The position numbers and the translations under genes were made by a program. From the IMG/VR virus record IMGVR_UViG_3300020442_000005, positions 124,001 to 188,000 of that record: a DNA stretch of 64,000 nucleotides; one strand, given 5' to 3'. Within the stretch, counting starts at the first letter, position 1. Every line of letters starts with the position of its first letter. The notes beneath the pieces are model-generated. The model was given only the letters and a program-made list of their open reading frames with translations, did no database searches and had not been told where the DNA came from. Positions 573 through 57,087 of the stretch are shown piece after piece.

Positions 573-1407
573 AAAATCCCACAACAAAAAAAGAAATGTC
601 GGGATTATTTACGAGCAATTGATTTTGACTGTCTCGAAAGGAATTGTAAAAAATAATCCAAAGCTTGTTGAAAGCGCGAAAAGTATTATTAAAAAACATT
701 TTGTACCTGGCACCGAGCTATACAAAGAGCACAAACTCTTTCAAGCGCTTGTCAAACCACATATTGATAATGATTCGTTGGCAACATCAATTTTAGGCGA
801 GGCAAAAAAAGCAGCAAGAGCCCACGATTCGAATCGATTAGAACGTGAAAAATCACGACTCATAAGAGACATAAATCTAACTTTTGGAAAAGGCTTCTAT
901 GGTACACGTATCAAGGAATACAAGGAGTTTGCTACAGTACAGACGTTAATGAACGATTGGCGCCAAAATAGCACTAATATTCAGCGTATTGTTGAATATG
1001 AGCAAAAGGTACACAACATACTTACATCTGAAAAAACAGTAAAAACATTGTCTGAGCATAAATCACCTGATGCTGATAATCTTGTCGTAAAAATAATGAC
1101 AGAAAAATTTAATCAGAAATACGGTTCTAAACTTACTGATCAGCAAAGCATGCTTATAAAAAATTATGTAATGTCAGATAAGAAAATTAATTTTGAATCG
1201 ACACTCAATTCTATACGAGAAAACTGTATTAGAGAGTTAAATCGTTATTCAATCAACTGTGAATCATCAATAGTAAAAAGCAAAATAGATCCTGTCATTT
1301 TAGAACTAAAACAACTGGATACAGCAAATCTAAATGACGAAAACTTTAGCAAATTTATGACTTTGTGTCATTTGCAAAAAGAGCTTAAGGAGAGAACAAA
1401 TGGATAA
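565..1407 (+). CDS. Head-module protein, putative prohead core/assembly factor
   Basis: 280 aa helical ORF with an SD (GGAGG), overlapping both neighbours and lying between the putative portal and the protease. Confidence 0.5.
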   Translation: MTRKSHNKKRNVGIIYEQLILTVSKGIVKNNPKLVESAKSIIKKHFVPGTELYKEHKLFQALVKPHIDNDSLATSILGEAKKAARAHDSNRLEREKSRLIRDINLTFGKGFYGTRIKEYKEFATVQTLMNDWRQNSTNIQRIVEYEQKVHNILTSEKTVKTLSEHKSPDADNLVVKIMTEKFNQKYGSKLTDQQSMLIKNYVMSDKKINFESTLNSIRENCIRELNRYSINCESSIVKSKIDPVILELKQLDTANLNDENFSKFMTLCHLQKELKERTNG

Positions 1408-2011
1408 TGCCCTTAGATTATTACAGGAATGGAATGCTTTTTCATACGATAGAGAACAGATACTTGAGGAAAGAGCAACCAATGGCGGCCGGTATGTCAT
1501 GAGAGGCGTGCTGCAAAAATCCAACACGTTAAACCAAAACGGAAGAATATATCCGAAAGAAATATTAGAACGCGAAGTCCGAAATTATCAAAAGTTTATT
1601 GCAGAACGTAGAGCACTTGGTGAATTAGATCATCCAGAATCTTCAGTAGTTGAACTTAAAAACGCATCACACCTTGTAACTGAGGCTTACATGGAAGGGG
1701 ATATATGCTATGGAGTGGTTGAAATCCTTGATACACCGAGTGGAAAAATACTTAAATCACTTGTTGACGCAGGCGTTACTCTTGGTATTAGTTCTCGTGG
1801 TGTTGGGTCTACTCGACGTGAAGGTGACCACCAAGTGGTTCAAGATGATTTTCAGCTTATTTGTTGGGATTTTGTTAGTGAGCCATCTACTCCTGGGGCA
1901 TTCATGATGAAAGAAGGCCGTGAAATAAAAGAATCGGATTTAAAAAAATATTTTAATAAATCTGACAGAGTGGATAGAATACTTAACGATATTTTAGATT
2001 GGAGAAAATAA
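1400..2011 (+). CDS. Prohead core protease, T4 gp21-like
   Basis: Motifs NQNGRIYP, ALGELDHP, SHLVT, ILDTPSGKIL, GISSRGVGS and DFVSEPSTPGA; SD AAGGAG. Confidence 0.95.
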   Translation: MDNALRLLQEWNAFSYDREQILEERATNGGRYVMRGVLQKSNTLNQNGRIYPKEILEREVRNYQKFIAERRALGELDHPESSVVELKNASHLVTEAYMEGDICYGVVEILDTPSGKILKSLVDAGVTLGISSRGVGSTRREGDHQVVQDDFQLICWDFVSEPSTPGAFMMKEGREIKESDLKKYFNKSDRVDRILNDILDWRK

Positions 2012-6392: not shown

Positions 6393-8372
6393 ATGTCTTT
6401 TACATTAAATCAGTTGACCGAAGGTATCCGTCAGCGTCATATGGGCGCTCAACACCAACGGTTGACAGAAAAGTGGAACCGAACTGGTCTACTTAGAGGT
6501 CTTCAAGACCAATCACGCGAGAACATGGCTGTTCTTTTGGAAAACCAAGCCGCTCAAGTTCTTCGCGAAGCAAACACACTCGGTGGTACTACCAACGCAA
6601 CATCTGGAAACGCATCAGGTGATATCCGTGGATTCCAAAACATCGCATTTCCAATCGTTCGTCGTGTATTCGGTGGATTGGTTGCTAATGACCTTGTTTC
6701 TATCCAACCAATGTCTCTTCCAAGTGGACTTTTGTTCTACTTAGATTACACATACGGATCTTCAAACGGTGAAGTTGACACAGGCTCAGGTACTGATGCA
6801 GCTACTTATGCTGCAGGTCAATCGATCTACAACTCTCCAACTGGTAAATCAATCCAAGAAGGATCTTTTGCTGTTGGTGGTCAATACGATTTAGCTGGAT
6901 CTGGTTTCTCTCGTCGTCATGCTGAAGTTGAATTATCAGGTCACTCTGGTGAAACTACTGCTATTGAGTTTGGTATTATTAACCAGTCTGGTAAGTGGGA
7001 AAAAGGTAACATCATCACAGCTGTAGGATCATTGACCGGTGCTTCTGGTCGATTCATGCAGTTTGACCCACAGGTAACTACAGCTCTTGAAAACGGTACT
7101 ATCTCTCACGTACAATTTGCACGTGTTGATGTAGGCTACTTGTCAGGCTCTGGTTTCCAAGCTGATCTTACTCTTATCAAGGATGTAGCTCTTTCTATGG
7201 ATGACGCTTCGACTCTTGAAGAGGACGGTGTGGCTCCTGAAGTCGTACCTGCATCATTTCAAGCTGGAAACGGAATCCGTAACTTGCGTCGCTTGAATCA
7301 GTTGGTAACTATTCCATCTGCCACAAACGTTGTTTCTGCGGCTCCTTTAGCGACTACTAGCACATCAAATGCATTCGTTCTTATGACACTTATCGGTACA
7401 GGTTCTGCTTCTAGAACTGCAACTGGTGCTGGTGGTGCTCTTCACGGTGGTGACGCTGATGATGATTTGAACATATCATTTGTTCTTGGATCAAACCTTG
7501 ACGTTGATAACACAATCGGCGATGCACTTACTATCCCTGCTTTCGAGTCTAACTTGGCTGCAAACGGTGCTTCTGTATCTCCAGTTATTCCTGAAATCGA
7601 CATCAAGATTGAATCTTTGTCTGTAACTGCTGTAACTCGTAAGTTGCGTGCACGATGGTCTCCAGAGCTTGCTCAAGACTTGAACGCATACCACTCATTG
7701 GATGCAGAAGTTGAATTGACTCAGATCCTTTCTGAGCAAATCGCTCTTGAACTTGATCGCGAAATCTTGAACGACTTGTTGACACAAGCTAACGGTGCTA
7801 ACTTCTTCTGGTCACGTGCTCCTGGTAAGTTCGTAAACAAAGAAACTGGCGCTGCTGCTAACAAGGCTTCTTCATTGGCCGGCGGTCCTGCATTCACTGG
7901 TACAGTACGCGAATGGTACGAGACTTTGGTTGAAACCATCATCGACGCTTCTAACACAATCCATCGTAAGACTCTTCGTGGATCTGCTAACTTCATCGTG
8001 GTTGGACCTGATGTTGCTACAATCCTTGAAAGCTCTGTATTGTACAAGCCTGTTTACAGCCTTGACGGTGACGGACAAGTTGGTGCTGGAATGACTATCG
8101 GTGCTGAAAAAGTTGGTTCATTGTCTAACCGTTTCACAGTGTACAAAGATCCTTACTTCCCACGTAACAAGATTCTTATCGGTTACAAAGGTGGATCTTA
8201 CCTTGAAACTGGTTACGTCTATGCTCCATACGTACCTCTGATCGTAACTCCAACAATCTTTGCTCCTGAGGACTTCACTCCTCGTAAGGGTGTAATGACT
8301 CGTTACGGTAAGAAAATGGTTCGTTCGGACTTCTACGGAACTGTAACTTGTTTGGATATGAACATTATCTAA
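6393..8372 (+). CDS. Major capsid protein, T4 gp23-like, with a large central insertion
   Basis: Motifs LLENQ, FPIVRRVF, VSIQPMSLPSGLLFYL, RKLRARWSPELAQDLNAYH, LSEQIALELDREIL, YAPYVPL and PRKGVMTRYG. Confidence 0.97.
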   Translation: MSFTLNQLTEGIRQRHMGAQHQRLTEKWNRTGLLRGLQDQSRENMAVLLENQAAQVLREANTLGGTTNATSGNASGDIRGFQNIAFPIVRRVFGGLVANDLVSIQPMSLPSGLLFYLDYTYGSSNGEVDTGSGTDAATYAAGQSIYNSPTGKSIQEGSFAVGGQYDLAGSGFSRRHAEVELSGHSGETTAIEFGIINQSGKWEKGNIITAVGSLTGASGRFMQFDPQVTTALENGTISHVQFARVDVGYLSGSGFQADLTLIKDVALSMDDASTLEEDGVAPEVVPASFQAGNGIRNLRRLNQLVTIPSATNVVSAAPLATTSTSNAFVLMTLIGTGSASRTATGAGGALHGGDADDDLNISFVLGSNLDVDNTIGDALTIPAFESNLAANGASVSPVIPEIDIKIESLSVTAVTRKLRARWSPELAQDLNAYHSLDAEVELTQILSEQIALELDREILNDLLTQANGANFFWSRAPGKFVNKETGAAANKASSLAGGPAFTGTVREWYETLVETIIDASNTIHRKTLRGSANFIVVGPDVATILESSVLYKPVYSLDGDGQVGAGMTIGAEKVGSLSNRFTVYKDPYFPRNKILIGYKGGSYLETGYVYAPYVPLIVTPTIFAPEDFTPRKGVMTRYGKKMVRSDFYGTVTCLDMNII

Positions 8373-8753: not shown

Positions 8754-8763
8754 GAGTTAGAAA

Positions 8764-9174: not shown

Positions 9175-9185
9175 TGAGAAAAATA

Positions 9186-9581: not shown

Positions 9582-9591
9582 GGACACCAAA

Positions 9592-9816: not shown

Positions 9817-9825
9817 GAGACTTTC

Positions 9826-45062: not shown

Positions 45063-45683
45063 ATGCATTGGACAACCAACATCGATCCAAAAGTAAGAGA
45101 ACTAGAATTACGACACAACCCTGTGATGATACGAGTTAATAAATTCACAGAGGAAAGCGCCGCTGAATTTGCAACAAAAATGGCTATGGCACATAACACT
45201 GGACAATCTGTTATCCCGGTCGTTATTGATTCATATGGCGGACAGGTATACAGTCTTATGAGTATGATAAGTTCTATAAATGCCTCAGAAATCCCGGTAG
45301 CAACTATTGTAGAAGGAAAAGCAATGTCCTGTGGAGTAATATTGTTTTCATGCGGCCACGAAGGATTAAGATTTGTCACTCCAGAAGCTACTTTGATGAT
45401 TCACGATGTATCTTCGGGTGCGTTCGGAAAAAACGAGGAAATTCAAGCATCCGCAAAAGAAACAAACCGACTCAATAAAATGATTTATACTATTCTTGCT
45501 GATAACTGCAAAAAACCACGTGATTATTTTACGAAAGAAGTAAAAAGAAGAGGCCGCGCGGATTGGTATGTAACTCCAAACAAAGCTGTGAAAATGGGTT
45601 TAGCAGATCACGTGGGGCTTCCTAAACTTCAAATTGACGTCGACGTACAAATTAATTTAGCAATCCCAGATAAAGATGCATAA
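45063..45683 (+). CDS. clpP: ClpP-family protease
   Basis: Motifs IDSYGG, AMSCG (catalytic Ser), LMIHD (His) and DWY...AVKMGLAD. Confidence 0.88.
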   Translation: MHWTTNIDPKVRELELRHNPVMIRVNKFTEESAAEFATKMAMAHNTGQSVIPVVIDSYGGQVYSLMSMISSINASEIPVATIVEGKAMSCGVILFSCGHEGLRFVTPEATLMIHDVSSGAFGKNEEIQASAKETNRLNKMIYTILADNCKKPRDYFTKEVKRRGRADWYVTPNKAVKMGLADHVGLPKLQIDVDVQINLAIPDKDA

Positions 45684-45706: not shown

Positions 45707-46171
45707 ATGTCGACATCAATTTTAAAATGGGTTCACATGCACAAAGCATACGTGGAGTGGTTTCACTCCGCGCACTTGTTATCAAAGGGATCAAGTTTTG
45801 CTGGTGACCATGTAAATCTTTATGGAAAAATATACCAAGAAGCTTTTGAGCAATACGACGGTATTATAGAACGTGTGATTGGTATTACAAACAACGAAGA
45901 TTGCGCCTGTCCATCTAGTATCAATATGGGTGCATTGGGTATTTTACAAAAGTACCCATCTCCATCAAACGTTCCTGCCTTGAATATTGCTACGTCTGCA
46001 TTGCAGCTCAACAAAGACTATTGTCATTTTTTGAATGACCTTGTTTTAAATCTTAGGCAATCAGGAAAAATTACTTTGGGAACAGAAGATTTAATCGCTG
46101 GAACATGTAATACTATTGAAGGGTATACTTATTTGTTGCAGCAACGCGTCAAAGAATCAATTGGAGTTTAA
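45707..46171 (+). CDS. Dps/ferritin-like protein
   Basis: HSAHLLSKGSSFAGDH...Y...YDGIIER matches the Dps ferroxidase signature; late-type motif at 45680. Confidence 0.75.
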   Translation: MSTSILKWVHMHKAYVEWFHSAHLLSKGSSFAGDHVNLYGKIYQEAFEQYDGIIERVIGITNNEDCACPSSINMGALGILQKYPSPSNVPALNIATSALQLNKDYCHFLNDLVLNLRQSGKITLGTEDLIAGTCNTIEGYTYLLQQRVKESIGV

Positions 46172-46172: not shown

Positions 46173-46574
46173 ATGAAAATATCAAAAAGACAACTTAAGA
46201 GAATCATCAGAGAAGAATACTCACGCCTCAAGAGTCAAGGACTTATCAACGAAATGTCGGGTGTTGCATTTCCAGATCCGGAATTAGAGCAAGATACTCC
46301 GTATGATCGACTTATGGATGGTGCAGAAAATGAACCATACGATGGATACGTAGAAAAAATGGCACTTGCCCATGTTGAGAGCCAAGCTGGTAGATTAAAC
46401 TTTGATGAATATGCAGACTTTGCTTGGGATTATGGATACCGAACTGATGACGACTTAGATCAACTTGAAGAATGGTGGGAAGCAGCAATCGAGGAAAGTC
46501 GTGGTTATTCCTTCCGCGATTCTTTTGGCGATGGATATGGCCCTGGAGAGCGAAGACCGACAAGGCGAAGATAA
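46173..46574 (+). CDS. Leader-family protein, long leader (MKISKRQLKRIIREEYSRLKSQGLINE), acidic cargo
   Basis: Start reassigned to ATG 46173 (SD GGAG); late-type motif at 46125. Confidence 0.75.
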   Translation: MKISKRQLKRIIREEYSRLKSQGLINEMSGVAFPDPELEQDTPYDRLMDGAENEPYDGYVEKMALAHVESQAGRLNFDEYADFAWDYGYRTDDDLDQLEEWWEAAIEESRGYSFRDSFGDGYGPGERRPTRRR

Positions 46575-46951
46575 TGAAAATTACAAGAAGAAAATTAAAG
46601 CAGATTATCGAATCCGTTATGAACGAAGCTGTTCAAGATCCAGAATATGACAGAGAATATGACCTTGTTCAAAATAACATTAAAACACAACGTGGTTTTC
46701 TAGGATTTGCAATGCGAAGTTTGGAATCTAGTTATGGAAATCGATTTTATAATCATGGAAGGGGCAACATTGGAATATATCTTACACTTATAGGACAACA
46801 CGTAAGAGATGGACAAGACTCAAGAGGTGGCACCGTCGAAGGTCATATCGCATCAATAGAAGGCAAGCTCGCAGAATATCCCGATCTTCTCACACCAGCA
46901 GGGCGAGGACGACTGGATGCGTTGCTGGACCACTTAAAACAAAACTATTAA
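46574..46951 (+). CDS. Leader-family protein (MKITRRKLKQIIESVMNEA)
   Basis: Start reassigned to the TAATG overlap at 46574. Confidence 0.75.
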   Translation: MKITRRKLKQIIESVMNEAVQDPEYDREYDLVQNNIKTQRGFLGFAMRSLESSYGNRFYNHGRGNIGIYLTLIGQHVRDGQDSRGGTVEGHIASIEGKLAEYPDLLTPAGRGRLDALLDHLKQNY

Positions 46952-46965
46952 TCAGGGGAAAACGA

Positions 46966-47232
46966 ATGAAAATTACAAGAGCAAAATTAAAGCGGATTAT
47001 TCGTGAAGAAAAAGCACGCATTTTCGAGATGCATCACGGGCGTCCTCATGGAGATTTGGATAGTCTCGTTGAAGACACTCTTGAATATATTTCAGATGGT
47101 GCCTTTTCTAATGGTATGCAGATAGTACAATATGTTCGAGATGCAGGTCGCGATTATGGCCTTTCTGCAAGTGATCAGGATAAAGCAATTGCAAGAATTA
47201 TTAACGGTATGATGGCTGGCCCAAGATTTTAG
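46966..47232 (+). CDS. Leader-family protein (MKITRAKLKRIIREEKARIFE)
   Basis: Shared leader; small helical cargo. Confidence 0.75.
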   Translation: MKITRAKLKRIIREEKARIFEMHHGRPHGDLDSLVEDTLEYISDGAFSNGMQIVQYVRDAGRDYGLSASDQDKAIARIINGMMAGPRF

Positions 47233-47241
47233 GAAAATAAA

Positions 47242-47757
47242 ATGAAAATATCAAAAAGACAGCTTAAGAAGATAATACAAGAAGAATACATCGCCTTGAA
47301 AAGACAGGGTTTAATTACTGAATACGGTCTTGGCGATGAGTTTGACGGAATGCGCAATCCAGGCAGACGTGCACAAGATAGATCTATACCCGGAAGTATT
47401 GCTCGGGTTGATTGGATTAAACTCCACCATGACCCTTATTATGATAATAACCCACCAGAATGGCTCGGAAACCCAAAAGAAGAGTTGGATGCATTCCTTG
47501 ACTTAATAATTTCTGCCGAGCTTGAGAATGTACTGGATGGCTTAGGAATGTCAGAACTATATAGACCAGCGATGGATGAGATCGACTACGAAGGAATTTT
47601 CCACGGCGGCAAAACAATCATGAAAATACTTGAAAATGTTTTTCCTTATTCTGATGGTTCATATTTATACAGAGCCTTAGAAAGATGGGCTGCTGAGCAT
47701 ACAAGTTCAGGAAAAATACATTCTGGCGAAATCCGGTATACCCAGCCGCAGAGATGA
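47242..47757 (+). CDS. Leader-family protein, long leader (MKISKRQLKKIIQEEYIALKRQGLITE)
   Basis: Shared leader; unique cargo. Confidence 0.75.
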   Translation: MKISKRQLKKIIQEEYIALKRQGLITEYGLGDEFDGMRNPGRRAQDRSIPGSIARVDWIKLHHDPYYDNNPPEWLGNPKEELDAFLDLIISAELENVLDGLGMSELYRPAMDEIDYEGIFHGGKTIMKILENVFPYSDGSYLYRALERWAAEHTSSGKIHSGEIRYTQPQR

Positions 47758-48161
47758 TAAACGTAATGAGCAAGATATTAACAAAAGCCTTTTGGGATTC
47801 TGTATGGAATTGGTGTAAGATCAACTGGAAATTTCTTGTTGGTTTTGCAATACCCTGTATTTTGCTGATTGCGGTTAATAGACGTAAGGCATTCAAGTTG
47901 CTTGAAAAAGGCATTGAGTTCCGTAATCAACAGTTAGATGTAGCACAGAGAGCTTCGGATCTCGAGTCCGATGGGAAGGTCAAGAACGCTAAGGAATTTG
48001 CTGATCGTGTAGAGGAGGTGACAACCAGACACGAGGAGGCTCTTCGCAAGCTTGGTGAAAACGTCCAAGACCGGCGTGAAGAATTGGGTGGGTCTGATGC
48101 TGCTGTTGTAACGGACGCTTTGGCGGATCGCTTTAATTTGAAGAATGGAGACAACAAGTGA
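47754..48161 (+). CDS. Membrane-anchored coiled-coil protein, possible i-spanin
   Basis: N-terminal TM segment (FLVGFAIPCILLIAV) followed by a coiled coil; near the endolysin. Confidence 0.45.
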   Translation: MINVMSKILTKAFWDSVWNWCKINWKFLVGFAIPCILLIAVNRRKAFKLLEKGIEFRNQQLDVAQRASDLESDGKVKNAKEFADRVEEVTTRHEEALRKLGENVQDRREELGGSDAAVVTDALADRFNLKNGDNK

Positions 48162-48835
48162 ATGCTAAAAAACTAAGAAAAATTATCGCTGAAGAGTTAG
48201 CGGTTATCTCAAAATCAGCAATTGACGACACTGTAATGAATATTCTAAGTGATGAAGGTGGCGCAGCTGGACTCGATCCAATCGAAAAAGCTTTAAAAGA
48301 TTTAGAAAACGATCAGATGGAACTTCCGGAAGAAAGTATCGAAGAATTAATATCAAGTGTTGCAGGCGTTAAACGCCATCGCGATGGTGACTATATAGAC
48401 ACAACTCAACTTGAAGGAAAAGCATATTTTACAAAACGCAGATTAAATCAGATAGTCAAAGAAGAATACAAACGCTTAAAGGATGAGGGACTAATATCAG
48501 AAACCTTTAAAAGTAAGTCAACTTTTGGCGGCAGATCCCCAGAATATAAAATGCGAATGCCTAAGTTGTACGGTACACAAATGCAAGATGCAAGACGGGG
48601 TAACCGACTACCACCAGAAAGTTCAAATTGGTTTAGATTTGCAAAACATTTGGATATCGGTATACTAGATCTAGATGAAGTAGCACATGAACTTCGTTTT
48701 AAAAATTTTGAACACATGGACGCAGCTGTGTCACCACGTGGTCTAAATCAATCAGAAGCTGATCGAGTTGCTGATATAATGTATGATTTATACATGATTG
48801 AAGATATCGATGTATACGACGCTTTGGAGAAATAA
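48158..48835 (+). CDS. Leader-family protein with two leader copies
   Basis: N-terminal MNAKKLRKIIAEE and internal FTKRRLNQIVKEEYKRLKDEGLISE. Confidence 0.7.
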   Translation: MNAKKLRKIIAEELAVISKSAIDDTVMNILSDEGGAAGLDPIEKALKDLENDQMELPEESIEELISSVAGVKRHRDGDYIDTTQLEGKAYFTKRRLNQIVKEEYKRLKDEGLISETFKSKSTFGGRSPEYKMRMPKLYGTQMQDARRGNRLPPESSNWFRFAKHLDIGILDLDEVAHELRFKNFEHMDAAVSPRGLNQSEADRVADIMYDLYMIEDIDVYDALEK

Positions 48836-48838
48836 AAA

Positions 48839-49366
48839 ATGAGTATATCAAAAAGAGAAATCAGGCGAATAGTAGAAAAATCATCTTGTGGTCGGCGCCG
48901 TGTACGAGAAATGGACGATGCGGCACCTGGAATCGGTACGTCATACGAAGACGTTCGTGAACTAGCCAAGTATCACGCTCTTAATGGCGACAAAGACCAA
49001 ATGCTTTATCGCGATAACCCTGATTACAAAGATGCATATGATGAAATGACAATGAAGGAATCTAAAATAAATTTACGACTTAGAACAAAAATTAGACGTC
49101 TTACCGAATCGATGAAAAACCTTTACGGTGACATACAGAATGAAATACTGTATATTGGCCAAGAGCAGGGCGGTGAAATAGTTGTGCAAGATGTCGTTGA
49201 TTATTTGCAAAATTATGCAAATGACCCATTGGGAGATCCGCGAGCTGATTATGTTAGTAGCATGCCATATGAAGAAGTACGGCAAATAATGTTTGATATG
49301 GTTGACGCCGGAATGCTTACCGATGGCTATGAAGATTTCTTCTATGTCCATCCGGACTACATGTAA
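48839..49366 (+). CDS. Leader-family protein (MSISKREIRRIVE) with an internal leader-like segment and a winged-helix-like C-domain
   Basis: Internal LRTKIRRLTES; C-domain IQNEILYIGQEQGGEIVVQDVVDYL. Confidence 0.65.
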   Translation: MSISKREIRRIVEKSSCGRRRVREMDDAAPGIGTSYEDVRELAKYHALNGDKDQMLYRDNPDYKDAYDEMTMKESKINLRLRTKIRRLTESMKNLYGDIQNEILYIGQEQGGEIVVQDVVDYLQNYANDPLGDPRADYVSSMPYEEVRQIMFDMVDAGMLTDGYEDFFYVHPDYM

Positions 49367-49416
49367 TATGCGGCTGCAGGCCCGTTAGAGACTGCAAAAT
49401 ATAAAAGGAAATAAAA

Positions 49417-50313
49417 ATGGCTGTTGACAAAGAGTTTTATAACGAAGCATCGGCTTCAAAGCTTGGCTGGGAACCTGAATGGTTTATTCCCGGCCATAAT
49501 CTTTTTGATAAAAAATTAACAAAAGCTATCAAAGAATGGCAAACCACACGTGGTCTGTATGCTGACGGCATGTGCGGACCTGGTACGTTTCGACATATCA
49601 ATGCTGAAATAGAATCACAGCGTGAGCTAGACGCTTTAGGTTGGGTATCAGATTCTTCAGATGTAATTTGGTGGGGAGATAAGCCCATAAAGATCGACTG
49701 GCCTTCTAACAAGGTACACACGTTTAAGGATGAAGGTTTTCCTTATCCTATTAGCAAGGGCGTTACAAAAAACTCTCGTAAAAGAAAGATTAATTCTTTC
49801 GTGACGCATTGGGACGTATGCCTTAGTTCCATGAGCTGCGCAAAAGTTCTAGCCAAGCGTAATGTATCCGTGCATTTCTGTATTGACAACGATGGCACGA
49901 TCATTCAGCTTCACGATCTTAATGACTCTTGTTGGCATGCTGGCAACAGCAAAGTAAACCGTACAAGTGTCGGCGTTGAGATTTCAAACGCATATTATCA
50001 AAAATATCAAGGATGGTATAAAAAGAACGTAGGTAAGGAAAGACCAATCATGTCTGGTGCGTTAGCACAGAATAAACCTCTTAAAGACTTTACTTGGTTC
50101 TACCCAGAACAGATTGAGGCTCTTAAAGCCTTATACAAAGCAATCCACGAGGGATGTGATGTGCCTCTTCAGTCTCCGGCAAATAAGTGGGCTTTCGATA
50201 GCTCGGCAGCTGGTGGAAGCTGGAAAGGTTTTATGAATCACTTTCACTGTTCAAAAAAGAAGATTGACTGTGGTGGATTAGATATTGAAAAACTTTTAGA
50301 AGAAATTAAATGA
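49417..50313 (+). CDS. Endolysin: peptidoglycan-binding domain plus N-acetylmuramoyl-L-alanine amidase (Amidase_2)
   Basis: Motifs AIKEWQTTRGLYADGMCGPGT, THWD, SVHFCIDNDGTIIQ, CWHAG, SVGVEI and NHFH...KIDCG. Confidence 0.88.
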   Translation: MAVDKEFYNEASASKLGWEPEWFIPGHNLFDKKLTKAIKEWQTTRGLYADGMCGPGTFRHINAEIESQRELDALGWVSDSSDVIWWGDKPIKIDWPSNKVHTFKDEGFPYPISKGVTKNSRKRKINSFVTHWDVCLSSMSCAKVLAKRNVSVHFCIDNDGTIIQLHDLNDSCWHAGNSKVNRTSVGVEISNAYYQKYQGWYKKNVGKERPIMSGALAQNKPLKDFTWFYPEQIEALKALYKAIHEGCDVPLQSPANKWAFDSSAAGGSWKGFMNHFHCSKKKIDCGGLDIEKLLEEIK

Positions 50314-50885
50314 AAATTACAAGAAGACAACTAAGAAGAATTATCAAAGAAGCAAGTGCTTCGTACGGTGAAAGATTGTATCGCGATATTGTTGGACACG
50401 AATTCCAACCGGATTATGTGTATCGACCGGTCCAACAGATGATGGGCCAGGCCCAACCTCAAAATCTAATAAAGTATCGTTCAGTCAACGAGGTAATGAA
50501 AGCAATTGCAAATTACTATCGTAAGAAATATGGACCAGATGATGCAAAAGCTTACATTCGTGCTAATCCAACCATTATAGATTTTTTAGAAAATGATTCT
50601 GAAGCTTTAAAAAGTATGCATCCCAGACGTTTTGGAGGAGATTCGTTTGGAAGACCTGGAATCTTATATTACAGCCCCTCTGAAATTAGCCTTTCATGGG
50701 GTAACGTGGATGCAGTTGCTGAGGCTGGTCAAGATTTCCAACGGCTCCCGGGAGACCTTGCACAGATTGCAGAACAATTATACAATGAAGATCGATTACT
50801 TCCCGCGTTTTTACACTTGATCACCGGTACACAGCCAAGAAATCATGTCAATCGCGCCAATGGTTACGGAAGTATTTCAAACTAA
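50310..50885 (+). CDS. Leader-family protein (MKITRRQLRRIIKEA)
   Basis: ATGA-type overlap with the endolysin stop; shared leader. Confidence 0.75.
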   Translation: MKITRRQLRRIIKEASASYGERLYRDIVGHEFQPDYVYRPVQQMMGQAQPQNLIKYRSVNEVMKAIANYYRKKYGPDDAKAYIRANPTIIDFLENDSEALKSMHPRRFGGDSFGRPGILYYSPSEISLSWGNVDAVAEAGQDFQRLPGDLAQIAEQLYNEDRLLPAFLHLITGTQPRNHVNRANGYGSISN

Positions 50886-50902: not shown

Positions 50903-51760
50903 ATGAAAGCAAACTCTGCGCGCAAGTTAAGACATTTGGTTCGTCGTATCATCGTAGAATCACAAAGCTTGGATAATCAGATTCTCAGTAGATCTGATTA
51001 TATGCGTGGATTGATGTTATTTATTGAAAATAACCCGGGAACTACTACAGACGAAATGTTTGATTCTCCGGTTGCAAATGCAATTATTCCAATTGGTATA
51101 AGAGAAAGAGCAATATTGCTTTGGGTAAAGAAGCTAATCAAGGATGGTTTTATTATTTCAAAAAGATATAGGCTTTATTCAACTGGCAAAGCAGATTATG
51201 TAAATCACAATGTTGTTTTAGAAAACGTTATTATGGAAAGCGCCAAGTTCTCAAGTTATGATGCTTTCACAAGACAGGAAAATCTTGACCTTCGAATGAT
51301 GGAACATGATAAAGGTCATATCGATCTAGAAAACAATTCTGCAATTGCGAAAGCTTTTCAAGTATATTCGGAAACAACAACAGTTTCTTTGTTTCGCGGA
51401 ATATACAACACCGAAACACGGATGCTTTCAAATATGCAGCCAGGCGACACATTCCAATTTGGTCGTGTAACTTCACTATCAGAAAACTTTGAAATTGCAA
51501 AAAAGTTTGCAATAAATAAAAAAATCGTTGAGCTAGTACCAGGCACGAAAGGTTGTTTTAGTTTTGTCGATTTTCTGGTCGACTACTATGATGGATGGAA
51601 GCGAAAGGATCCTATGGACTACGAAATGCAGGATGGTGAATGGCGCAAAGGATCGGCGGAAAGAGAGGCCGAATGGTTCGTATCCGGGGATACACAATTT
51701 CAGCTTTTAGACGTTGCAGAAAGAGATGGAATGACCGTGTACAAGATCAAAACTCTTTAA
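50903..51760 (+). CDS. Leader-family variant carrying a winged-helix-like domain and an ADP-ribosyltransferase domain
   Basis: Leader RKLRHLVRRIIVES. R-S-E ART motifs: LFRG, VTSLSEN..IAKKFA and EREAEW. Confidence 0.65.
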   Translation: MKANSARKLRHLVRRIIVESQSLDNQILSRSDYMRGLMLFIENNPGTTTDEMFDSPVANAIIPIGIRERAILLWVKKLIKDGFIISKRYRLYSTGKADYVNHNVVLENVIMESAKFSSYDAFTRQENLDLRMMEHDKGHIDLENNSAIAKAFQVYSETTTVSLFRGIYNTETRMLSNMQPGDTFQFGRVTSLSENFEIAKKFAINKKIVELVPGTKGCFSFVDFLVDYYDGWKRKDPMDYEMQDGEWRKGSAEREAEWFVSGDTQFQLLDVAERDGMTVYKIKTL

Positions 51761-51820: not shown

Positions 51821-52786
51821 ATGATCAATTATCTTTATCGGCCAACAAACCTGCAAGTCTCCAGTAAAATCGTTCATCAAGGCGATAGGGTGCCATTTAA
51901 GTGGGCCGGCGCTAAAAATAGGATGTTTAAAAAATACATTTCAACTGGATTCTTTCCGGCAAAGCAACCAAAAATATTTGTTGACATGTTTGCAGGTACT
52001 GGTGCGGTTGGACGTTGGATAGCTCAAAATTATCCAAATACGACGGTAGTTCTAAACGAAACTTGTGGTGAATTAGTTGGTATGTATAAACAGCTTAAGA
52101 CCAAGAATTATAATGCGTTCATTGCAGCATATAGTAAGCATGTTAAAGCATATGCAAGTTATTCTACTGTTGAAGATCGTAAAAAATATTATTACGGTGT
52201 TAGAAACCAATACGCGTTATCCTATCAAAACATGACTCCAGCAGAAGAAGCTGCAGCTCTTTTCTATATGCTACAAACGGGCTTCAATGGAATATGGCAG
52301 ACATCAGACAACTTTAACAATAGATACGCGTCGCCCGCTGGACTAATGACTTGGAAGCCTTCTGGCGATCTATTTGATATTAATAGAATAAAAAAATATT
52401 CAGAGTTTATTGATCGCTGTGTATTACTTAATGATGACTTTGAAGCAACTTCGTGCTTTATGGGTTCCGATACCTGGTTTTATGCTGATCCACCATATCG
52501 TGTTTCAAAAGCAAAATATGCATCAGCAGGTGATTTTACAAACAACGATCAAATTAGATTATGTAATTTTCTTAATGATGCACACAAGGCAAATGATATG
52601 TGTTCAATGAGCAACAGAGAAGATTCAGATAAGCAAATTGGAAAAGAAGTTGGTACAATAACTAAGGGTTGGTTTGCTGATAAATTTAACGATGACTGGA
52701 ATGTTTCGTATTATGATGTTAAATACACAGCTGGCCGACACAACTTAGGTCAAAAAGGAAAAGAAGTTCTTATTAAAAATTATTAA
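51821..52786 (+). CDS. DNA adenine methyltransferase, Dam/D12 class
   Basis: Motifs PFKWAGAK, DMFAGTG, GFNG and YADPPY. Confidence 0.92.
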   Translation: MINYLYRPTNLQVSSKIVHQGDRVPFKWAGAKNRMFKKYISTGFFPAKQPKIFVDMFAGTGAVGRWIAQNYPNTTVVLNETCGELVGMYKQLKTKNYNAFIAAYSKHVKAYASYSTVEDRKKYYYGVRNQYALSYQNMTPAEEAAALFYMLQTGFNGIWQTSDNFNNRYASPAGLMTWKPSGDLFDINRIKKYSEFIDRCVLLNDDFEATSCFMGSDTWFYADPPYRVSKAKYASAGDFTNNDQIRLCNFLNDAHKANDMCSMSNREDSDKQIGKEVGTITKGWFADKFNDDWNVSYYDVKYTAGRHNLGQKGKEVLIKNY

Positions 52787-52797: not shown

Positions 52798-53550
52798 GTG
52801 ATATTTGATCTTTACGGTGATGGAATAGGCACAGTAGAATACGTACAACACATGGGCGAAGACATAACTATTGTGAACAGCGCAAGAGTTAGCTTTGGAA
52901 AACACAAGGAGACGATGGATGAAAAAGACAGAAAACTTATCAGATATCTCATCAAGCACAGACACACATCAACCCTCGAACACAATATTGCTACGTTTAG
53001 GTTTGTGGTACCTCTGTATGTGCGTAGCCAGCACCATCGTCATAGAACTTGGTCTTATAACGAAATTAGTCGTCGATATACTGCAGAAAATTTGAGATTT
53101 TATGAGCCACAAAAATTTAGAACACAACACAAATCAAACCGACAAGCCTCCAATCATGATGAGTTGGATCCGATTATGGGATACTTTGAAGATGGCGGAC
53201 CTAACTACGCAAGCGCATCTATTAGAAGTCATCATCGCAACAGTGTATGTTTATACAACTCATTAATGGAAAAGGGCGTATGCAGGGAACAGGCAAGAGG
53301 CGTTTTGCCACAGAACATGTACACCGAATATTATGGAACAGCTAACTTAAATAATCTTCTAAAATTTTGCGGGTTGCGTCTTCATGATGGTGCGCAGCTT
53401 GAAATACAAAAAGTTGCTGAGGGTATAATTGGCATATGCAAAAATCTTTGGCCTATCACAATCGAAGCATACATTGCTAGTTTGGAAGACCGAGCACTAG
53501 CTGAAAGGCTAGAAAATATCGAGATTATTAAGGCCAAACCGCATAATTAG
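52798..53550 (+). CDS. thyX: Flavin-dependent thymidylate synthase
   Basis: Motifs IVNSARVSF, HTSTLEH, RHRTWSYNEISRRY, EQARGVLP and AQLEI. Confidence 0.95.
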   Translation: MIFDLYGDGIGTVEYVQHMGEDITIVNSARVSFGKHKETMDEKDRKLIRYLIKHRHTSTLEHNIATFRFVVPLYVRSQHHRHRTWSYNEISRRYTAENLRFYEPQKFRTQHKSNRQASNHDELDPIMGYFEDGGPNYASASIRSHHRNSVCLYNSLMEKGVCREQARGVLPQNMYTEYYGTANLNNLLKFCGLRLHDGAQLEIQKVAEGIIGICKNLWPITIEAYIASLEDRALAERLENIEIIKAKPHN

Positions 53551-53982: not shown

Positions 53983-54279
53983 ATGAGAATATCAAAAAGA
54001 CGCTTACGCATGATTATTAAAGAAGAATATACAAAACTTAAAAGACAAGGGTTGTTGAGTGAATCTAGATTCAGCAGCAGAGGATCTTCGTCTAGATTAA
54101 CAGTATCTCAGCTCAGAAGACTGATCAGAGAAGCGCTCGATGAAGAAGATGATTCTGAAGAGGAAGATGATAAACCAGGTCCGGGTGAGGACGCTGAGGG
54201 CCGAATGGGTGCTGGTGATCCTAAAAACGCAAAGAAAAACCCAAGAAAGAAAAAACCCAAAGCGCAAGACATGAGATAA
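53983..54279 (+). CDS. Leader-family protein with a tandem double leader
   Basis: MRISKRRLRMIIKEEYTKLKRQGLLSE followed by RLTVSQLRRLIREALDEE; late-type motif at 53936. Confidence 0.75.
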   Translation: MRISKRRLRMIIKEEYTKLKRQGLLSESRFSSRGSSSRLTVSQLRRLIREALDEEDDSEEEDDKPGPGEDAEGRMGAGDPKNAKKNPRKKKPKAQDMR

Positions 54280-54301
54280 ATCCTTCAATCCGGAGAAACC
54301 A

Positions 54302-54652
54302 ATGAGAATATCAAAAAGACATCTTAAAAGAATCATCAAAGAAGAATATACAAAATTAAAACGCCAAGGACTTATTAGTGAAGGTTTTCGCGATATGCGC
54401 GGTGGCCATGGCCGTCAAATGAGCTTGCAAGATTACGAAGAGCAAGACCCAAACATGATGGAAGACAATTATGACGCTGCAGTGGAAGAGTGTATGGCTG
54501 CTATTCCAGGAATGATGAAAAAGATTATTTCAATGGGAATGGGACACACTGTAATGAATGACATTTATCATATCTGCGCGCCAATCTGCAAAAGCTACGG
54601 CGTTGATGCTGACGAAGTTTCAGAAGAAATTATGGAAAGACTTGGATACTAA
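54302..54652 (+). CDS. Leader-family protein, long leader (MRISKRHLKRIIKEEYTKLKRQGLISE)
   Basis: Shared leader; SD GGAG. Confidence 0.75.
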   Translation: MRISKRHLKRIIKEEYTKLKRQGLISEGFRDMRGGHGRQMSLQDYEEQDPNMMEDNYDAAVEECMAAIPGMMKKIISMGMGHTVMNDIYHICAPICKSYGVDADEVSEEIMERLGY

Positions 54653-54654
54653 AG

Positions 54655-54960
54655 ATGAAAGTGACCAAGAGACAGATAAAGCGTATTATTCGTGAAGAAT
54701 ACAATAAGATGCGTAGAGAACAGCGTATTGTTACTGAAAGCTATTTTAAAAACCTTTTAGTAGAAATAGAGGATCATCTTTTGTATTTGGCTGACATGCA
54801 TGCCGGTAGTGTACCTATTGAAAAGGTTGTACGGCCATTAAAAAGAAAGTTTAAGCATTTCTCTGGAATGACAAGGGCTACAGTTTTTGCAGAGCTTATG
54901 GAAATGCAGCCCTATTTTAGCGTGATACGGATTGATGGTGACAACATAATTTCTTACTAA
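54655..54960 (+). CDS. Leader-family protein (MKVTKRQIKRIIREEYNKMRREQRIVTE) with a winged-helix-like cargo
   Basis: Shared leader; helix-G-strand-helix-helix-hairpin pattern in the cargo. Confidence 0.72.
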   Translation: MKVTKRQIKRIIREEYNKMRREQRIVTESYFKNLLVEIEDHLLYLADMHAGSVPIEKVVRPLKRKFKHFSGMTRATVFAELMEMQPYFSVIRIDGDNIISY

Positions 54961-55026: not shown

Positions 55027-55833
55027 ATGCCTGAAGGACCTGAAGTCAAACGGATTGGTGAAGGATTAGCCCGAGCCATTTCTGGTAAAACACTTATAGA
55101 AGCCAACATATTGTCTGGCAGATATGCAAAAAAACCACCATCCGGGTGGGAACACATCAACGCTTCAATTCCGCTGCGCGTTATTGGCGCTGGTGTACAC
55201 GGAAAGTTTTTGTATTGGTTGTGCGATAATGAAACCTTCTTTTATTCAACTCTTGGAATGACTGGTTCTTGGAATAAAAAAGCAAAGAAGAATGCACGAT
55301 TGGAGTTCAAATTTTCTGATGGAAGTTCAGTGTATTATAACGACACTAGAAATTTCGGTACATTCAAGGTCGTTAAAGGAAAGCAAAACCTTATTGACAA
55401 ACTTACTGGTCTAGGTCCAGATATGTTAGCTGAGGATGTAACCGACCAAAAGTTTACCGAACGCCTAAGAAAAAAATCTAACTGGGGTATAACAAAAGCA
55501 CTCATGGACCAGTCAGTAATTTGTGGTGTTGGAAATTATATAAAAGCTGATTCGCTTTGGCTAGCCAAGATTAATCCTCACAAAACAGTGTCCGAATTAA
55601 CGGATGGTGAGTTGTCTATATTAAATCGTTCAATCAAAAAAATCATTAGAGAATCTTATGAATCTGGTGGTGCAACGATTAAGTCATACTCTGGTTTTGA
55701 TGACGAGGATGGCGAGTATGGTAGACGTTTTTTGGTTTACGGCCAGGACACCGACCCTGATGGAAATGAAGTTATCAGGGAAGAAACAGCTGATAAAAGA
55801 AATACTCATTGGGTCCCGGTAGTACAAAAATGA
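55027..55833 (+). CDS. Fpg/Nei-family DNA glycosylase/AP lyase with a zincless finger
   Basis: N-terminal MPEGPEV, HGKF, LGMTG, DTRNFG and H2TH LMDQSVICGVGNY; the C-terminus lacks the four Cys. Confidence 0.92.
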   Translation: MPEGPEVKRIGEGLARAISGKTLIEANILSGRYAKKPPSGWEHINASIPLRVIGAGVHGKFLYWLCDNETFFYSTLGMTGSWNKKAKKNARLEFKFSDGSSVYYNDTRNFGTFKVVKGKQNLIDKLTGLGPDMLAEDVTDQKFTERLRKKSNWGITKALMDQSVICGVGNYIKADSLWLAKINPHKTVSELTDGELSILNRSIKKIIRESYESGGATIKSYSGFDDEDGEYGRRFLVYGQDTDPDGNEVIREETADKRNTHWVPVVQK

Positions 55834-55994
55834 AAATTGGCGATCTGGTAAGAGTTGTGGAGTCTCATATTAGCGCGGGTGACTCCGGAGTGGTAGTTGA
55901 ATGCACAAATAAGGCAGTAAACGTTTATTGGGCAGCTGCAGATGCAACATACTGGATAGAAAAAATATATCTCGAGGTCATACATGAAAATTAA
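55830..55994 (+). CDS. Small KOW/SH3-like protein (MKIGDLVRV)
   Basis: Start reassigned to the ATGA overlap at 55830. Confidence 0.6.
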   Translation: MKIGDLVRVVESHISAGDSGVVVECTNKAVNVYWAAADATYWIEKIYLEVIHEN

Positions 55995-56748: not shown

Positions 56749-57087
56749 ATGTCACAAAAAAAGAGAAAAGACGCAGATGGATCTTCTGGCGTAGATCTAT
56801 TGGATAAGGATAAAGCTAAGAACAAGGTTAGGCCACCTAGTAAATATAAAGTCGTGTATCACAATGATAACTTTACGCCAATGGATTTAGTTGTCTTGTC
56901 ATTAATACATTTTTTTAAGCGAGAACCTACCGCTGCTTTTCAAATCATGATGCATGTACACGAAAAGGGAAGAGGTGTCGCTCAAGGAGGACTATCGCGA
57001 GAAATTGCTGAAACAAAATGCGATCGCGTGGTACAATGGTTTAAGTCACAAGGATATCCCTTGTTGGCAACTTTCGAAAAGGAATAG
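56749..57087 (+). CDS. clpS: ClpS N-end-rule adaptor
   Basis: Motifs PPSKYKVVYHNDNFTPMDLVV, MMHVHEKG, REIAETK and GYPL. Confidence 0.92.
   Translation: MSQKKRKDADGSSGVDLLDKDKAKNKVRPPSKYKVVYHNDNFTPMDLVVLSLIHFFKREPTAAFQIMMHVHEKGRGVAQGGLSREIAETKCDRVVQWFKSQGYPLLATFEKE

What the first reader, a model, noticed from the sequence alone, without database searches (positions are those of the whole stretch)
48158..49366. Internal leader copies suggest self-processing polyproteins
Seen: 48158 has a full long leader in mid-protein (QLE-GKAYFTKRRLNQIVKEEYKRLKDEGLISE). 48839 has an internal LRTKIRRLTES. 53983 has two leaders in tandem followed only by an acidic/basic tail. Inference: adjacent cassettes have fused, and gp21 would cut them into separate cargoes. 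This supports a role for the motif as a binding and cleavage module independent of translation start.
Basis: partly seen in the sequence, partly recalled or inferred. Interest (0 to 1): 0.6.

Follow-up and report, generated by a model that had tools for sequence, protein, structure and literature searches.

The report
Fused leader-tagged cargo genes, jumbo phage
An uncultured marine T4-related jumbo phage puts the same short N-terminal tag on 30 or more unrelated small proteins, and three genes here are in-frame fusions of such tagged units, which suggests the tag is a capsid-loading and cutting signal like that of T4's injected internal proteins.

Summary
All three observations are in the sequence. 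The window lies in a 273-kb marine virus record with a T4-type capsid protein and a gp21-family (Peptidase_S77) prohead protease.

- **Leader family:** at least 26 genes in the record start with one 15-28-residue basic helical leader.
- **ORF 48158-48835:** the mid-protein leader scores 34.7 bits (E 3e-9).
- **ORF 53983-54279:** the second leader scores 23 bits on a position matrix (under 0.05 expected per shuffled proteome). It evolves under purifying selection while the tail diverges.
- **ORF 48839-49366:** the internal LRTKIRRLTES is not above background by score. About 50 stand-alone homologues of the downstream domain carry a normal N-terminal leader at exactly that place.

Both halves of ORF 48158 exist elsewhere as separate leader-bearing genes. 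Close relatives and an independent metagenome carry the second half alone at the same locus. Fusion of leader cassettes is therefore well supported, and the motif works without a start codon.

Capsid targeting and cutting are inferred, not shown. The supporting facts are that every leader class ends in [LIVM]-x-E, and that the capsid protein keeps L-x-E|A aligned with T4's maturation site. "Self-processing" is not supported, because these ORFs have no protease domain. This is a new variant of the T4 capsid-targeting-sequence system.

The parts
48158..48196 (+). Shortened N-terminal leader (aa 1-13) of ORF 48158-48835, GTG start overlapping the stop of the upstream gene
   Evidence: Matrix score 15.5 bits, 0.2 expected per shuffled proteome, at an N-terminus. 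It aligns with the canonical leader of other module-A proteins. Predicted helix 3-14.
48197..48421 (+). Module A (aa 14-88): acidic folded domain, net charge about -11, single copy in this genome
   Evidence: pLDDT about 90, three helices plus a beta hairpin. Found in 115 of 120 word-search clusters and 101 representative clusters. Stands alone with its own leader in P0289 and P0253. Single copy in the record. Charge.
48422..48502 (+). Internal long leader (aa 89-115), no start codon (GCA at the Met position), ends G-L-I-S-E
   Evidence: 34.7 bits, E 3e-9 against the long-leader HMM. Stand-alone homologues P0004-P0007 start with Met exactly here. An RBS-like GAAGGA remains just upstream. Helix 93-109 flanked by low-confidence linkers at 87-91 and 116-137.
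48503..48835 (+). Module B cargo (aa 116-225 plus stop): disordered linker, then a helical domain of unknown function
   Evidence: pLDDT above 90 for aa 138-225. Occurs as a separate gene at the syntenic place in L001 and L002. No Pfam, PHROG, NCBIfam or fold match.
48839..48877 (+). Weak N-terminal leader (aa 1-13) of ORF 48839-49366
   Evidence: 10.8 bits, about 2 expected per proteome but only about 0.008 at N-termini.
48878..49066 (+). N-module of ORF 48839 (aa 14-76)
   Evidence: Shared with L001 (171 aa) and L002 (354 aa). In L002 it is followed by different downstream modules.
49067..49111 (+). Internal degenerate leader (aa 77-91), ends L-T-E-S directly before the cargo
   Evidence: Not above background by score. 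It is the positional homologue of the 15-29-residue N-terminal leaders of about 50 stand-alone cargo clusters, and closest to the 19-residue class.
49112..49366 (+). Cargo domain of ORF 48839 (aa 92-175 plus stop), acidic (about -14)
   Evidence: 61 homologous clusters; 50 carry only an N-terminal leader, 7 a longer N-part, 3 none. Charge.
53983..54063 (+). Long leader (aa 1-27) of ORF 53983-54279
   Evidence: 56.2 bits.
54091..54135 (+). Second, Met-less leader (aa 37-51; TCT at the Met position) after a 9-residue Ser/Arg linker
   Evidence: 21.8-23.3 bits, under 0.05 expected. Six synonymous against two non-synonymous changes versus L006. Conserved in P0145-P0147. RBS-like GAGGA upstream.
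54136..54279 (+). Acidic-then-basic low-complexity tail (aa 52-98 plus stop)
   Evidence: Fast-evolving: over aa 59-98 there are 5 synonymous against 18 non-synonymous changes versus L006.
1400..2011 (+). gp21-family prohead serine protease, the candidate processing enzyme
   Evidence: Pfam Peptidase_S77 8.4e-27. phrog_207 1.7e-49. 32% identity to T4 gp21, E 8e-24.
6393..8372 (+). gp23-like major capsid protein; L57-R58-E59|A60 (nt 6561-6572) aligns with the T4 gp23 maturation site
   Evidence: Pfam Gp23 7.9e-76. MAFFT aligns it with T4 L63-T64-E65|A66. The 65-residue T4 propeptide is from PMC5694885.
8445..10386 (+). Five consecutive leader-bearing genes directly downstream of the capsid gene (8445-8753, 8764-9174, 9186-9581, 9592-9816, 9826-10386)
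46173..47757 (+). Four consecutive leader-bearing genes upstream of the finding (46173-46574, 46574-46951, 46966-47232, 47242-47757)
50310..50885 (+). Leader-bearing gene (191 aa) that is absent from the syntenic relative L001
50903..51760 (+). ADP-ribosyltransferase-like protein (Alt/Mod-like C-domain) with a weak leader-like N-terminus ending I-V-E-S
   Evidence: phrog_832 2.9e-8. Precomputed Pfam hit Mod_ADP_RT, weak. Leader score only 8.5 bits.
54302..54960 (+). Two further leader-bearing genes (54302-54652, 54655-54960)

Best explanation
The leader is a portable N-terminal propeptide that works like the capsid-targeting sequence of T4 internal proteins. It is a basic amphipathic helix of 15-28 residues. 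It would dock otherwise unrelated small proteins into the prohead core. The phage's gp21-family (S77) protease would then cut it off after the Glu of a terminal [LIVM]-x-E.

The leader-coding DNA is repeated dozens of times per genome, so recombination at or next to leaders shuffles units in frame. This produces ORFs with two to four leaders. ORF 48158 is leader + module A + leader + module B. ORF 48839 is leader + N-module + decayed leader + cargo. ORF 53983 is leader + leader + charged tail. Internal leaders keep working as peptides and sit between folded domains in flexible linkers. In the prohead such a fusion would therefore be cut in trans into separate pieces.

Shown: the leader family, the internal copies, the fused and unfused forms, purifying selection on internal leaders, presence of the protease, and the conserved capsid-protein site. 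Inferred: capsid loading, cleavage, and recombination at leaders as the cause of the fusions.
For: **Leader family.** 18 strict and at least 26 HMM-supported N-terminal copies occur in the 273-kb record. More than 117 stretches carry the motif in IMG/VR, and 551 leader ORFs were found in 908 kb of fetched loci.

**Internal copies.** They are significant by score or by homology.

**Fused and unfused forms.**
- Module B alone: P0004-P0007, and the syntenic loci L001 and L002.
- Population polymorphism: an 88-codon difference in run X4, while X2 and X9 carry the fused form.
- Module A alone: P0289 and P0253.
- A second independent pair: P0054 (fused) against P0130 (unfused).
- The fused forms make one clade nested among unfused ones (support 80/92).

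**Leader - A - leader architecture.** In 53 clusters the second leader lies at a fixed offset after module A.

**Selection at the peptide level.** The second leader of ORF 53983 shows 6 synonymous against 2 non-synonymous changes. Its tail shows 5 against 18.

**One cargo, many leaders.** The cargo family of ORF 48839 carries five leader length classes. All 57 sequences with an N-terminal extension have [LIVM]-x-E within 2 residues of the junction.

**Protease and capsid site.**
- Peptidase_S77 in the head module.
- It is present in 16 of 22 leader-bearing records, including all 4 that are at least 90% complete. The six without it are at most 50% complete.
- The capsid protein's L-R-E|A aligns with T4's L-T-E|A.

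**T4 comparison.** T4 leaders end I-A-E|A, I-T-E|A and L-R-E|S. T4 internal proteins share only their leader (PMC3012670, PMC12373910). gp21 removes 10-20-residue targeting propeptides (PMC5694885).

**Location of leader genes.** Five lie directly after the capsid gene. A leader-like N-terminus sits on the ORF two genes after the protease, and another on an Alt-like ADP-ribosyltransferase.

**Fold.** Two confident domains, each preceded by a helix, with low-confidence linkers at 87-91 and 116-137.
Against: - There is no proteomic, structural or biochemical evidence that any leader protein is in virions or is cut.
- [LIVM]-x-E is a low-information motif that is common in helices.
- The leader has no detectable sequence homology to the T4 targeting sequence beyond the M-K start and the I-x-E end. 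It is also longer and far more basic.
- Many leader genes lie among nucleotide-metabolism and replication genes rather than in the head module.
- Co-occurrence with the S77 protease may simply reflect one phage clade.
- The protease-leader complex prediction gave no verdict.
- No cultured phage carries the family, so nothing can be transferred from experiments.
- In other contigs 14 of 24 internal leaders keep ATG or GTG. Some 'fusions' there could instead also be expressed from internal starts.
Confidence: 0.55

Rival explanations
1. The leader is a functional helix that is neither cleaved nor a capsid signal. It could be a shared docking, oligomerisation or nucleic-acid-binding helix. On this view multi-leader ORFs are ordinary multidomain proteins in which the internal helix is a second binding site or a linker.
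For: The leader is a strongly basic amphipathic helix (pI 9.3-12; helices). Internal copies are under purifying selection, which any peptide-level function would explain. There is no direct evidence of cleavage. Many leader genes lie outside the head module.
Against: This view does not explain three things. Conservation stops sharply at a hydrophobic-x-Glu in every length class placed in front of one cargo. The leader is interchangeable and almost always exactly N-terminal (544 of 551 first leaders begin at a start codon). The family is confined, as far as seen, to phages with a gp21-type protease.
Confidence: 0.2
2. Internal leaders are neutral scars of recent gene fusions and have no function of their own. 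Only the first leader of each ORF matters.
For: The internal copy in ORF 48839 has decayed to background score. The Met codon is lost in all three window cases. The residue at the Met position of second leaders is often one mutation from ATG (I, V or L in 23 of 53 clusters; ATA in 5 of 24 cases).
Against: The second leader of ORF 53983 is near-invariant while its tail diverges (6 synonymous: 2 non-synonymous against 5: 18). The leader after module A is kept at a fixed offset in 53 diverged clusters. The long internal leader of ORF 48158 keeps all conserved positions through G-L-I-S-E.
Confidence: 0.12
3. The leader is a tag for the phage's ClpP-like protease and ClpS adaptor (timed degradation or processing in the cytoplasm), not for the S77 prohead protease.
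For: A ClpP-family gene (45063-45683; Pfam CLP_protease 1.5e-27) lies directly upstream of the leader-gene cluster here and in L001 and L002. A ClpS-like gene is called in the syntenic relative (L006). Its probable counterpart in the window is ORF 56749-57087, read from the translation but not scanned. PHROGs lists ClpP-like proteins of phages as head maturation proteases.
Against: No link beyond gene proximity. ClpS reads bulky hydrophobic N-terminal residues (established knowledge), which the leaders do not expose. The S77 enzyme sits in the head module, and the capsid protein keeps a T4-type site.
Confidence: 0.06
4. The internal leaders mark separate genes (internal initiation or mis-called ORFs), or the motif is conserved for mRNA or translation-initiation reasons rather than as a peptide.
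For: Leader DNA is A-rich and sits at start codons in 544 of 551 cases. In other contigs 14 of 24 internal leaders keep ATG or GTG. RBS-like remnants lie upstream of the two strong internal leaders, in ORF 48158 and ORF 53983.
Against: In the window the Met positions are GCA and TCT. There is no in-frame ATG, GTG or TTG between codons 55 and 131 of ORF 48158. The fused frame is conserved in independent assemblies. Synonymous changes are frequent within leaders.
Confidence: 0.04

Closest known systems
T-even phage internal proteins (IPI, IPII, IPIII, Alt) with their capsid-targeting sequence, processed by gp21
   Same: Many otherwise unrelated small proteins share only a short N-terminal leader that starts M-K and ends hydrophobic-x-Glu. 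The phage has a gp21-family protease and a gp23-type capsid protein with a conserved L-x-E|A site. The loci are plastic, with cassettes gained and lost between close relatives (PMC3012670, PMC12373910, PMC5694885).
   Different: The leader is 15-28 rather than 10-19 residues, strongly basic, and not detectably homologous to the T4 leader. There are about 30 carriers per genome, against 3 in T4 and about 10 known across T-evens. Leaders also occur inside ORFs, which I do not know to have been described for T4 internal proteins (my knowledge). Packaging and cleavage are untested here.
Head and inner-body proteins of giant phages phiKZ, 201phi2-1 and SPN3US, cut at several sites by a gp21-related prohead protease
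   Same: These are jumbo phages in which many internal head or ejection proteins are processed after Glu, sometimes at several sites within one protein. Paralogues can share a conserved N-terminus (PMC5694885).
   Different: Those propeptides are mostly long (over 100 residues) and protein-specific, and the motif is A/S/G-x-E. There is no genome-wide shared leader and no evidence of fused leader cassettes. The window's phage is on the T4 side by capsid-protein similarity.
Encapsulin cargo-loading peptides
   Same: A short portable peptide directs diverse cargo into an HK97-fold shell. A relative (L005) even puts the leader on a homologue of the window's protein 45707-46171. From its sequence that protein looks ferritin/Dps-like to me, but Pfam and NCBIfam gave no hit, so this is unverified.
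   Different: Encapsulin peptides are usually C-terminal, are not cleaved, and are unrelated in sequence (established knowledge, not tested here).
Viral polyproteins
   Same: One ORF encodes several independently folding units that exist as separate genes elsewhere, joined by candidate protease sites.
   Different: There is no protease domain inside these ORFs. Fusions are a minority state: 22 of 551 leader ORFs, or 4%. They are polymorphic, not the fixed expression strategy of the genome.

Membership tests
T4-type capsid-targeting-sequence / internal-protein system | A short N-terminal leader shared by otherwise unrelated small proteins of one phage | tested here: met
   At least 26 N-terminal copies by HMM in the record. 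The cargoes are unrelated to each other and have no Pfam or PHROG family.
T4-type capsid-targeting-sequence / internal-protein system | The leader ends at the gp21 cleavage motif (Leu/Ile-x-Glu) | tested here: met
   Short leaders end I-[KR]-E and long leaders G-[LI]-[LI]-x-E. All 57 N-terminally extended members of one cargo family have [LIVM]-x-E within 2 residues of the junction. T4 leaders read for comparison. This is a sequence motif only, not cleavage.
T4-type capsid-targeting-sequence / internal-protein system | The phage encodes a gp21-family prohead protease and a gp23-type capsid protein with a matching maturation site | tested here: met
   Peptidase_S77 8.4e-27. 32% identity to T4 gp21. 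Gp23 7.9e-76. L-R-E59|A60 aligned with T4 L-T-E65|A66.
T4-type capsid-targeting-sequence / internal-protein system | Sequence homology of the leader to the T4 targeting sequence | tested here: not met
   Only the M-K start and the I-x-E end are shared. No hit to any cultured phage. The comparison with T4 gp67 was empty.
T4-type capsid-targeting-sequence / internal-protein system | Leader proteins are packaged in the head and the leader is removed during maturation | not testable with these tools
   This needs virion proteomics or biochemistry. The complex prediction gave no verdict.
Self-processing polyprotein | One ORF made of units that exist as separate genes elsewhere | tested here: met
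   Module A alone (P0289, P0253). Module B alone (P0004-P0007, L001, L002). Cargo of ORF 48839 alone in about 50 clusters.
Self-processing polyprotein | A protease domain within the polyprotein that cuts it | tested here: not met
   No protease family or fold in ORFs 48158, 48839 or 53983.
Self-processing polyprotein | Demonstrated cleavage between the units | not testable with these tools
   Only candidate sites in low-confidence linkers are seen.
phiKZ/SPN3US-type processed inner head proteins | Cleavage motif A/S/G-x-E and long protein-specific propeptides | tested here: not met
   The leaders are short, shared, and end in a hydrophobic P3 residue. The motif for those phages is taken from PMC5694885.

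The most novel reading that the evidence does not exclude
The leader-coding sequence serves two purposes. As a peptide it loads cargo into the prohead and marks where the S77 protease cuts. As a DNA repeat it is the recombination handle that lets any cargo gene be added, swapped or stacked in frame. Together this would be a cassette system for the injected proteome of a whole clade of roughly 290-kb marine jumbo phages. In it, multi-leader ORFs are working polyprotein cargoes, and module A (leader - acidic domain - leader) is a dedicated mobile carrier unit.
Probability: 0.3. Interest if true: 0.75.

Novelty: new variant of a known kind. Interest (0 to 1): 0.6.

Why it matters
If the leader is a capsid-loading and cleavage signal, the packaged and probably injected proteome of an abundant, uncultured clade of marine jumbo phages can be read from sequence alone. 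That is about 30 proteins per genome and hundreds of cargo families across metagenomes. In T4 the three internal proteins each block a specific host restriction enzyme (PMC12373910), so this would be a large catalogue of candidate counter-defence proteins.

The fused forms would show that phage head cargo can be delivered as in-trans-processed polyproteins, and that a targeting peptide still works when it is internal. That is of practical interest for protein encapsidation in T4-type capsids.

The fused/unfused polymorphism gives a clean natural experiment with exact predicted neo-N-termini. The question is therefore directly testable by mass spectrometry.

Tried and rejected
- **Family scans.** Pfam, PHROGs and NCBIfam scans of the leader proteins found nothing meaningful.
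- **Cultured phages.** megablast and tblastn against cultured phages found no relatives of the leader proteins.
- **IMG/VR.** The search for related loci with the 225-aa protein found none.
- **Literature.** Six leader strings appear in no paper.
- **ESM Atlas and fold searches.** The Atlas gave only unnamed viral clusters. Foldseek against PDB and BFVD gave no match at E <= 0.001. Weak winged-helix-like rows for module A are not used as evidence.
- **Complex prediction.** Complex prediction of the S77 protease with a 45-residue leader fragment returned 'no answer'. It is not evidence either way.
- **T4 gp67.** Compared with ORF 53983 on a hunch (helical N-part plus acidic tail): no similarity.
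- **T4 late promoter.** TATAAATA is not enriched in the window (7 found, 5 expected), so it says nothing about timing.
- **Solved structures.** The sequence search for the ADP-ribosyltransferase-like protein was empty.
- **RNA runs.** No RNA run holds the stretch, so expression could not be examined.
- The leaders were then taken from the genome by pattern.
- **Settings and notes.** No other genetic code was used.
Full report
**Setting**

The window is bases 124001-188000 of a 273,025-bp linear IMG/VR virus record that CheckV rates 82% complete. Almost all genes are on the + strand. It is a distant T4-type jumbo myovirus.
- It has a gp23-family capsid protein at 6393-8372 (Pfam Gp23 7.9e-76).
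- Its best cultured relatives by capsid protein are Flavobacterium phage immuto, Microcystis phage Mel-JY01 and Rhodothermus phage RM378, at 42-48% identity.
- It has a gp21-family prohead protease at 1400-2011 (phrog_207 1.7e-49; Peptidase_S77 8.4e-27; 32% identity to T4 gp21).
- It also has two very large sheath-like proteins and a DnaE-type polymerase.
- The same DNA, or parts of it, stands in marine metagenomes from about ten studies.

**The leader family**

A strict pattern finds 18 ORFs in the record that begin with the same motif, M-K-I-T/S-K-R-Q-L-+-+-I-I-+-E. HMMs built from copies extracted from the genome find at least 26 N-terminal copies at E below 0.1. A position matrix adds several weaker ones.

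Eight copies are 'long' (27 residues) and end G-[LI]-[LI]-x-E. A second extended class ends in a hydrophobic-x-Glu at about residue 23. The carriers are small (74-295 aa), unrelated to one another, and have no Pfam, PHROG or NCBIfam family.

They lie in clusters. One cluster of five lies directly downstream of the capsid gene (8445-10386). Others lie at 46173-50885 and 53983-54960.

The family is widespread. In the 908 kb fetched there are 551 ORFs with a leader of 12 bits or more. No cultured phage and no paper in the library carries the motif.

**Checking the three observations**

(1) ORF 48158-48835. Residues 89-115 (nt 48422-48502) are a complete long leader lacking only the first residues, with A-Y-F in place of M-K-I.
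- It scores 34.7 bits (E 3e-9). It is the only strong hit in the six-frame scan that is not at an N-terminus.
- The codon at the Met position is GCA, and a GAAGGA like the ribosome-binding sites of real leader genes remains just upstream.
- The N-terminus of the ORF is itself a leader shortened by two residues (15.5 bits).

(2) ORF 53983-54279. A long leader is followed, after nine Ser/Arg-rich residues, by a second 15-residue leader (nt 54091-54135; TCT at the Met position).
- The local HMM is marginal. The ungapped matrix gives 21.8-23.3 bits, with fewer than 0.05 expected in a shuffled proteome.
- Three homologues at 71-87% identity keep both leaders almost unchanged while the charged tail diverges.
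- Against the relative L006 the second leader shows 6 synonymous and 2 non-synonymous codon changes. Tail residues 59-98 show 5 and 18.

(3) ORF 48839-49366. The string LRTKIRRLTES is there, but its score is at background. Homology rescues it.
- The downstream domain (aa 92-175) has 61 homologous clusters. In 50 of them it is preceded only by a normal N-terminal leader.
- Those leaders fall into five length classes (15, 19, 23, 24 and 28-29 residues), all ending hydrophobic-x-Glu one to three residues before the domain.
- The window's internal stretch is the positional counterpart of the 19-residue class.

**What the ORFs are**

ORF 48158 consists of a leader, module A (aa 14-88, acidic, net charge about -11), a second leader and module B.

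AlphaFold2 on a 55-sequence alignment gives two confident domains (pLDDT about 90). Each is preceded by a helix (3-14 and 93-109), and low-confidence linkers lie at 87-91 and 116-137.

Both halves exist as separate leader-bearing genes.
- Module B alone starts with Met exactly at the internal leader in P0004-P0007.
- In two syntenic relatives (L001, L002) module B sits directly after the same upstream gene, with no module A.
- A contig from an independent study joins 48151 to 48494 with 78 other letters. That is the module-B-alone form, 88 codons shorter. Contigs from two further studies bridge the fused junction.
- The fused forms (window, P0002, P0003) make one clade nested among unfused ones (support 80/92, midpoint root). 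This favours gain of module A.

Module A is a widespread domain, found in 101 representative clusters in an exhaustive search.
- It stands alone with its own leader (P0289, P0253).
- It occurs flanked by two leaders with no cargo (P0220).
- It is embedded in large proteins.
- Most often it is followed, at a fixed offset of 11-14 residues, by a second leader and a variable cargo. This holds in 53 of 115 clusters. The residue at the Met position is M in 20, I/V/L in 23 and another residue in 10.
- A second independent fused/unfused pair is P0054 against P0130.

Across the fetched loci 22 of 551 leader ORFs (4%) hold two or more leaders, and one holds four. At the Met position of internal copies the codons are ATG in 8, GTG in 6, ATA in 5 and other codons in 5.

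Leader cassettes also come and go as whole genes. The gene at 50310-50885 is missing from L001. L001 has a leader gene (3049-3369) that is missing from the window.

**How it most likely works**

The closest known system is the capsid-targeting sequence of T4.
- T4 internal proteins share nothing but a leader that directs them into the prohead core (PMC3012670, PMC12373910).
- gp21 then removes these 10-20-residue propeptides, always after a Glu (PMC5694885).
- Read from the T4 record, the leaders end I-A-E|A (IPII, IPIII), I-T-E|A (IPI) and L-R-E|S (gp24). gp23 is cut at L-T-E65|A.

Here every leader class ends in the same kind of motif. The phage has the protease family. MAFFT aligns the capsid protein's V-L-R-E59|A60 with T4's F-L-T-E65|A66. 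So a T4-like specificity is plausible.

Three further facts fit. A leader-like N-terminus sits on the ORF two genes after the protease (2392-2838). Another sits on an ADP-ribosyltransferase-like protein, recalling T4 Alt, although both scores are weak. The protease is present in 16 of 22 leader-bearing records, including all four that are at least 90% complete.

I therefore read the leader as a loading-and-cutting module. I read the multi-leader ORFs as in-frame fusions that would be cut in trans into separate pieces. Recombination at the repeated leader DNA is the likely cause of the fusions, but that is inference.

**What is not shown**

Packaging and cleavage are not shown. The motif is short and helix-like. 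The leader is not homologous to T4's. The protease co-occurrence may reflect one clade. The single complex prediction gave no verdict. 'Self-processing' fails, because no protease domain lies in these ORFs.

The rivals are:
- a non-cleaved binding helix;
- neutral fusion scars;
- a tag for the neighbouring ClpP-like/ClpS pair;
- internal initiation or an mRNA-level signal.

The last rival is excluded for the window's own three cases by the codons and the conserved frame.

**Verdict**

This is a new, much expanded and internally reusable variant of the T4 capsid-targeting-sequence idea, in an uncultured marine jumbo-phage clade. Interest 0.6.

Noticed in passing
L005:1237-4953: A 5-kb Tara scaffold carries 12 consecutive genes that each begin with a leader or a recognisable variant of it. 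One 372-aa protein has module A and a second leader inside it. Another puts the leader on a homologue of the window's leaderless protein 45707-46171, which looks ferritin/Dps-like to me but has no Pfam or NCBIfam hit.
   Followed up: partly
window 45063-45683 and 56749-57087: The phage encodes a ClpP-family protease directly upstream of the leader-gene cluster. It also has a probable ClpS-like adaptor, by synteny with a PF02617 gene in L006; the window ORF itself was not scanned. It therefore has two candidate protease systems (S77 and ClpP-like).
   Followed up: partly
window 14675-18022 and 18043-21741: Two adjacent very large proteins (1115 and 1232 aa) each end in a tail-sheath C-terminal domain (Pfam Phage_sheath_1C 3.3e-4, below the curated cut-off, and 8.8e-9). 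A duplicated giant sheath is unusual.
   Followed up: no
window 50310-50885; L001:3049-3369: Whole leader-bearing genes are present or absent between the window and its close syntenic relative. A 191-aa gene is only in the window, and a 106-aa gene is only in L001.
   Followed up: partly
window 50903-51760: A 285-aa protein has an ADP-ribosyltransferase-like C-domain (phrog_832 2.9e-8; 25-29% identity to jumbo Erwinia and Klebsiella phage proteins). Its N-terminus is leader-like and ends I-V-E-S, which recalls T4 Alt, a packaged and gp21-cut enzyme.
   Followed up: partly
window 55027-55833, aa 197-210: The Fpg/Nei-type DNA glycosylase has an internal stretch scoring 14.2 bits on the leader matrix (0.15 expected). 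It lies inside a conserved enzyme and is probably a chance helix.
   Followed up: no
window 2392-2838: The ORF two genes downstream of the prohead protease starts with a leader-like peptide. It holds several hydrophobic-x-Glu sites in its first 40 residues, making it a candidate scaffold or core protein.
   Followed up: no
window 51821-52786, 52798-53550, 55984-56580, 59843-63448: A Dam-type methyltransferase homologue (PF02086 on its L001 counterpart), a probable ThyX (my reading of the sequence, not scanned), an MT-A70 methyltransferase homologue (PF05063 on its L006 counterpart) and a DnaE-type Pol III alpha with a PHP domain (Pfam). This is a large replication and modification set for a T4-type phage.
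   Followed up: no
P0249 (658 aa) and P0247 (476 aa): Module A also occurs deep inside large, otherwise unrelated metagenomic proteins. It is therefore a general small domain, not only a phage-head cassette.
   Followed up: no
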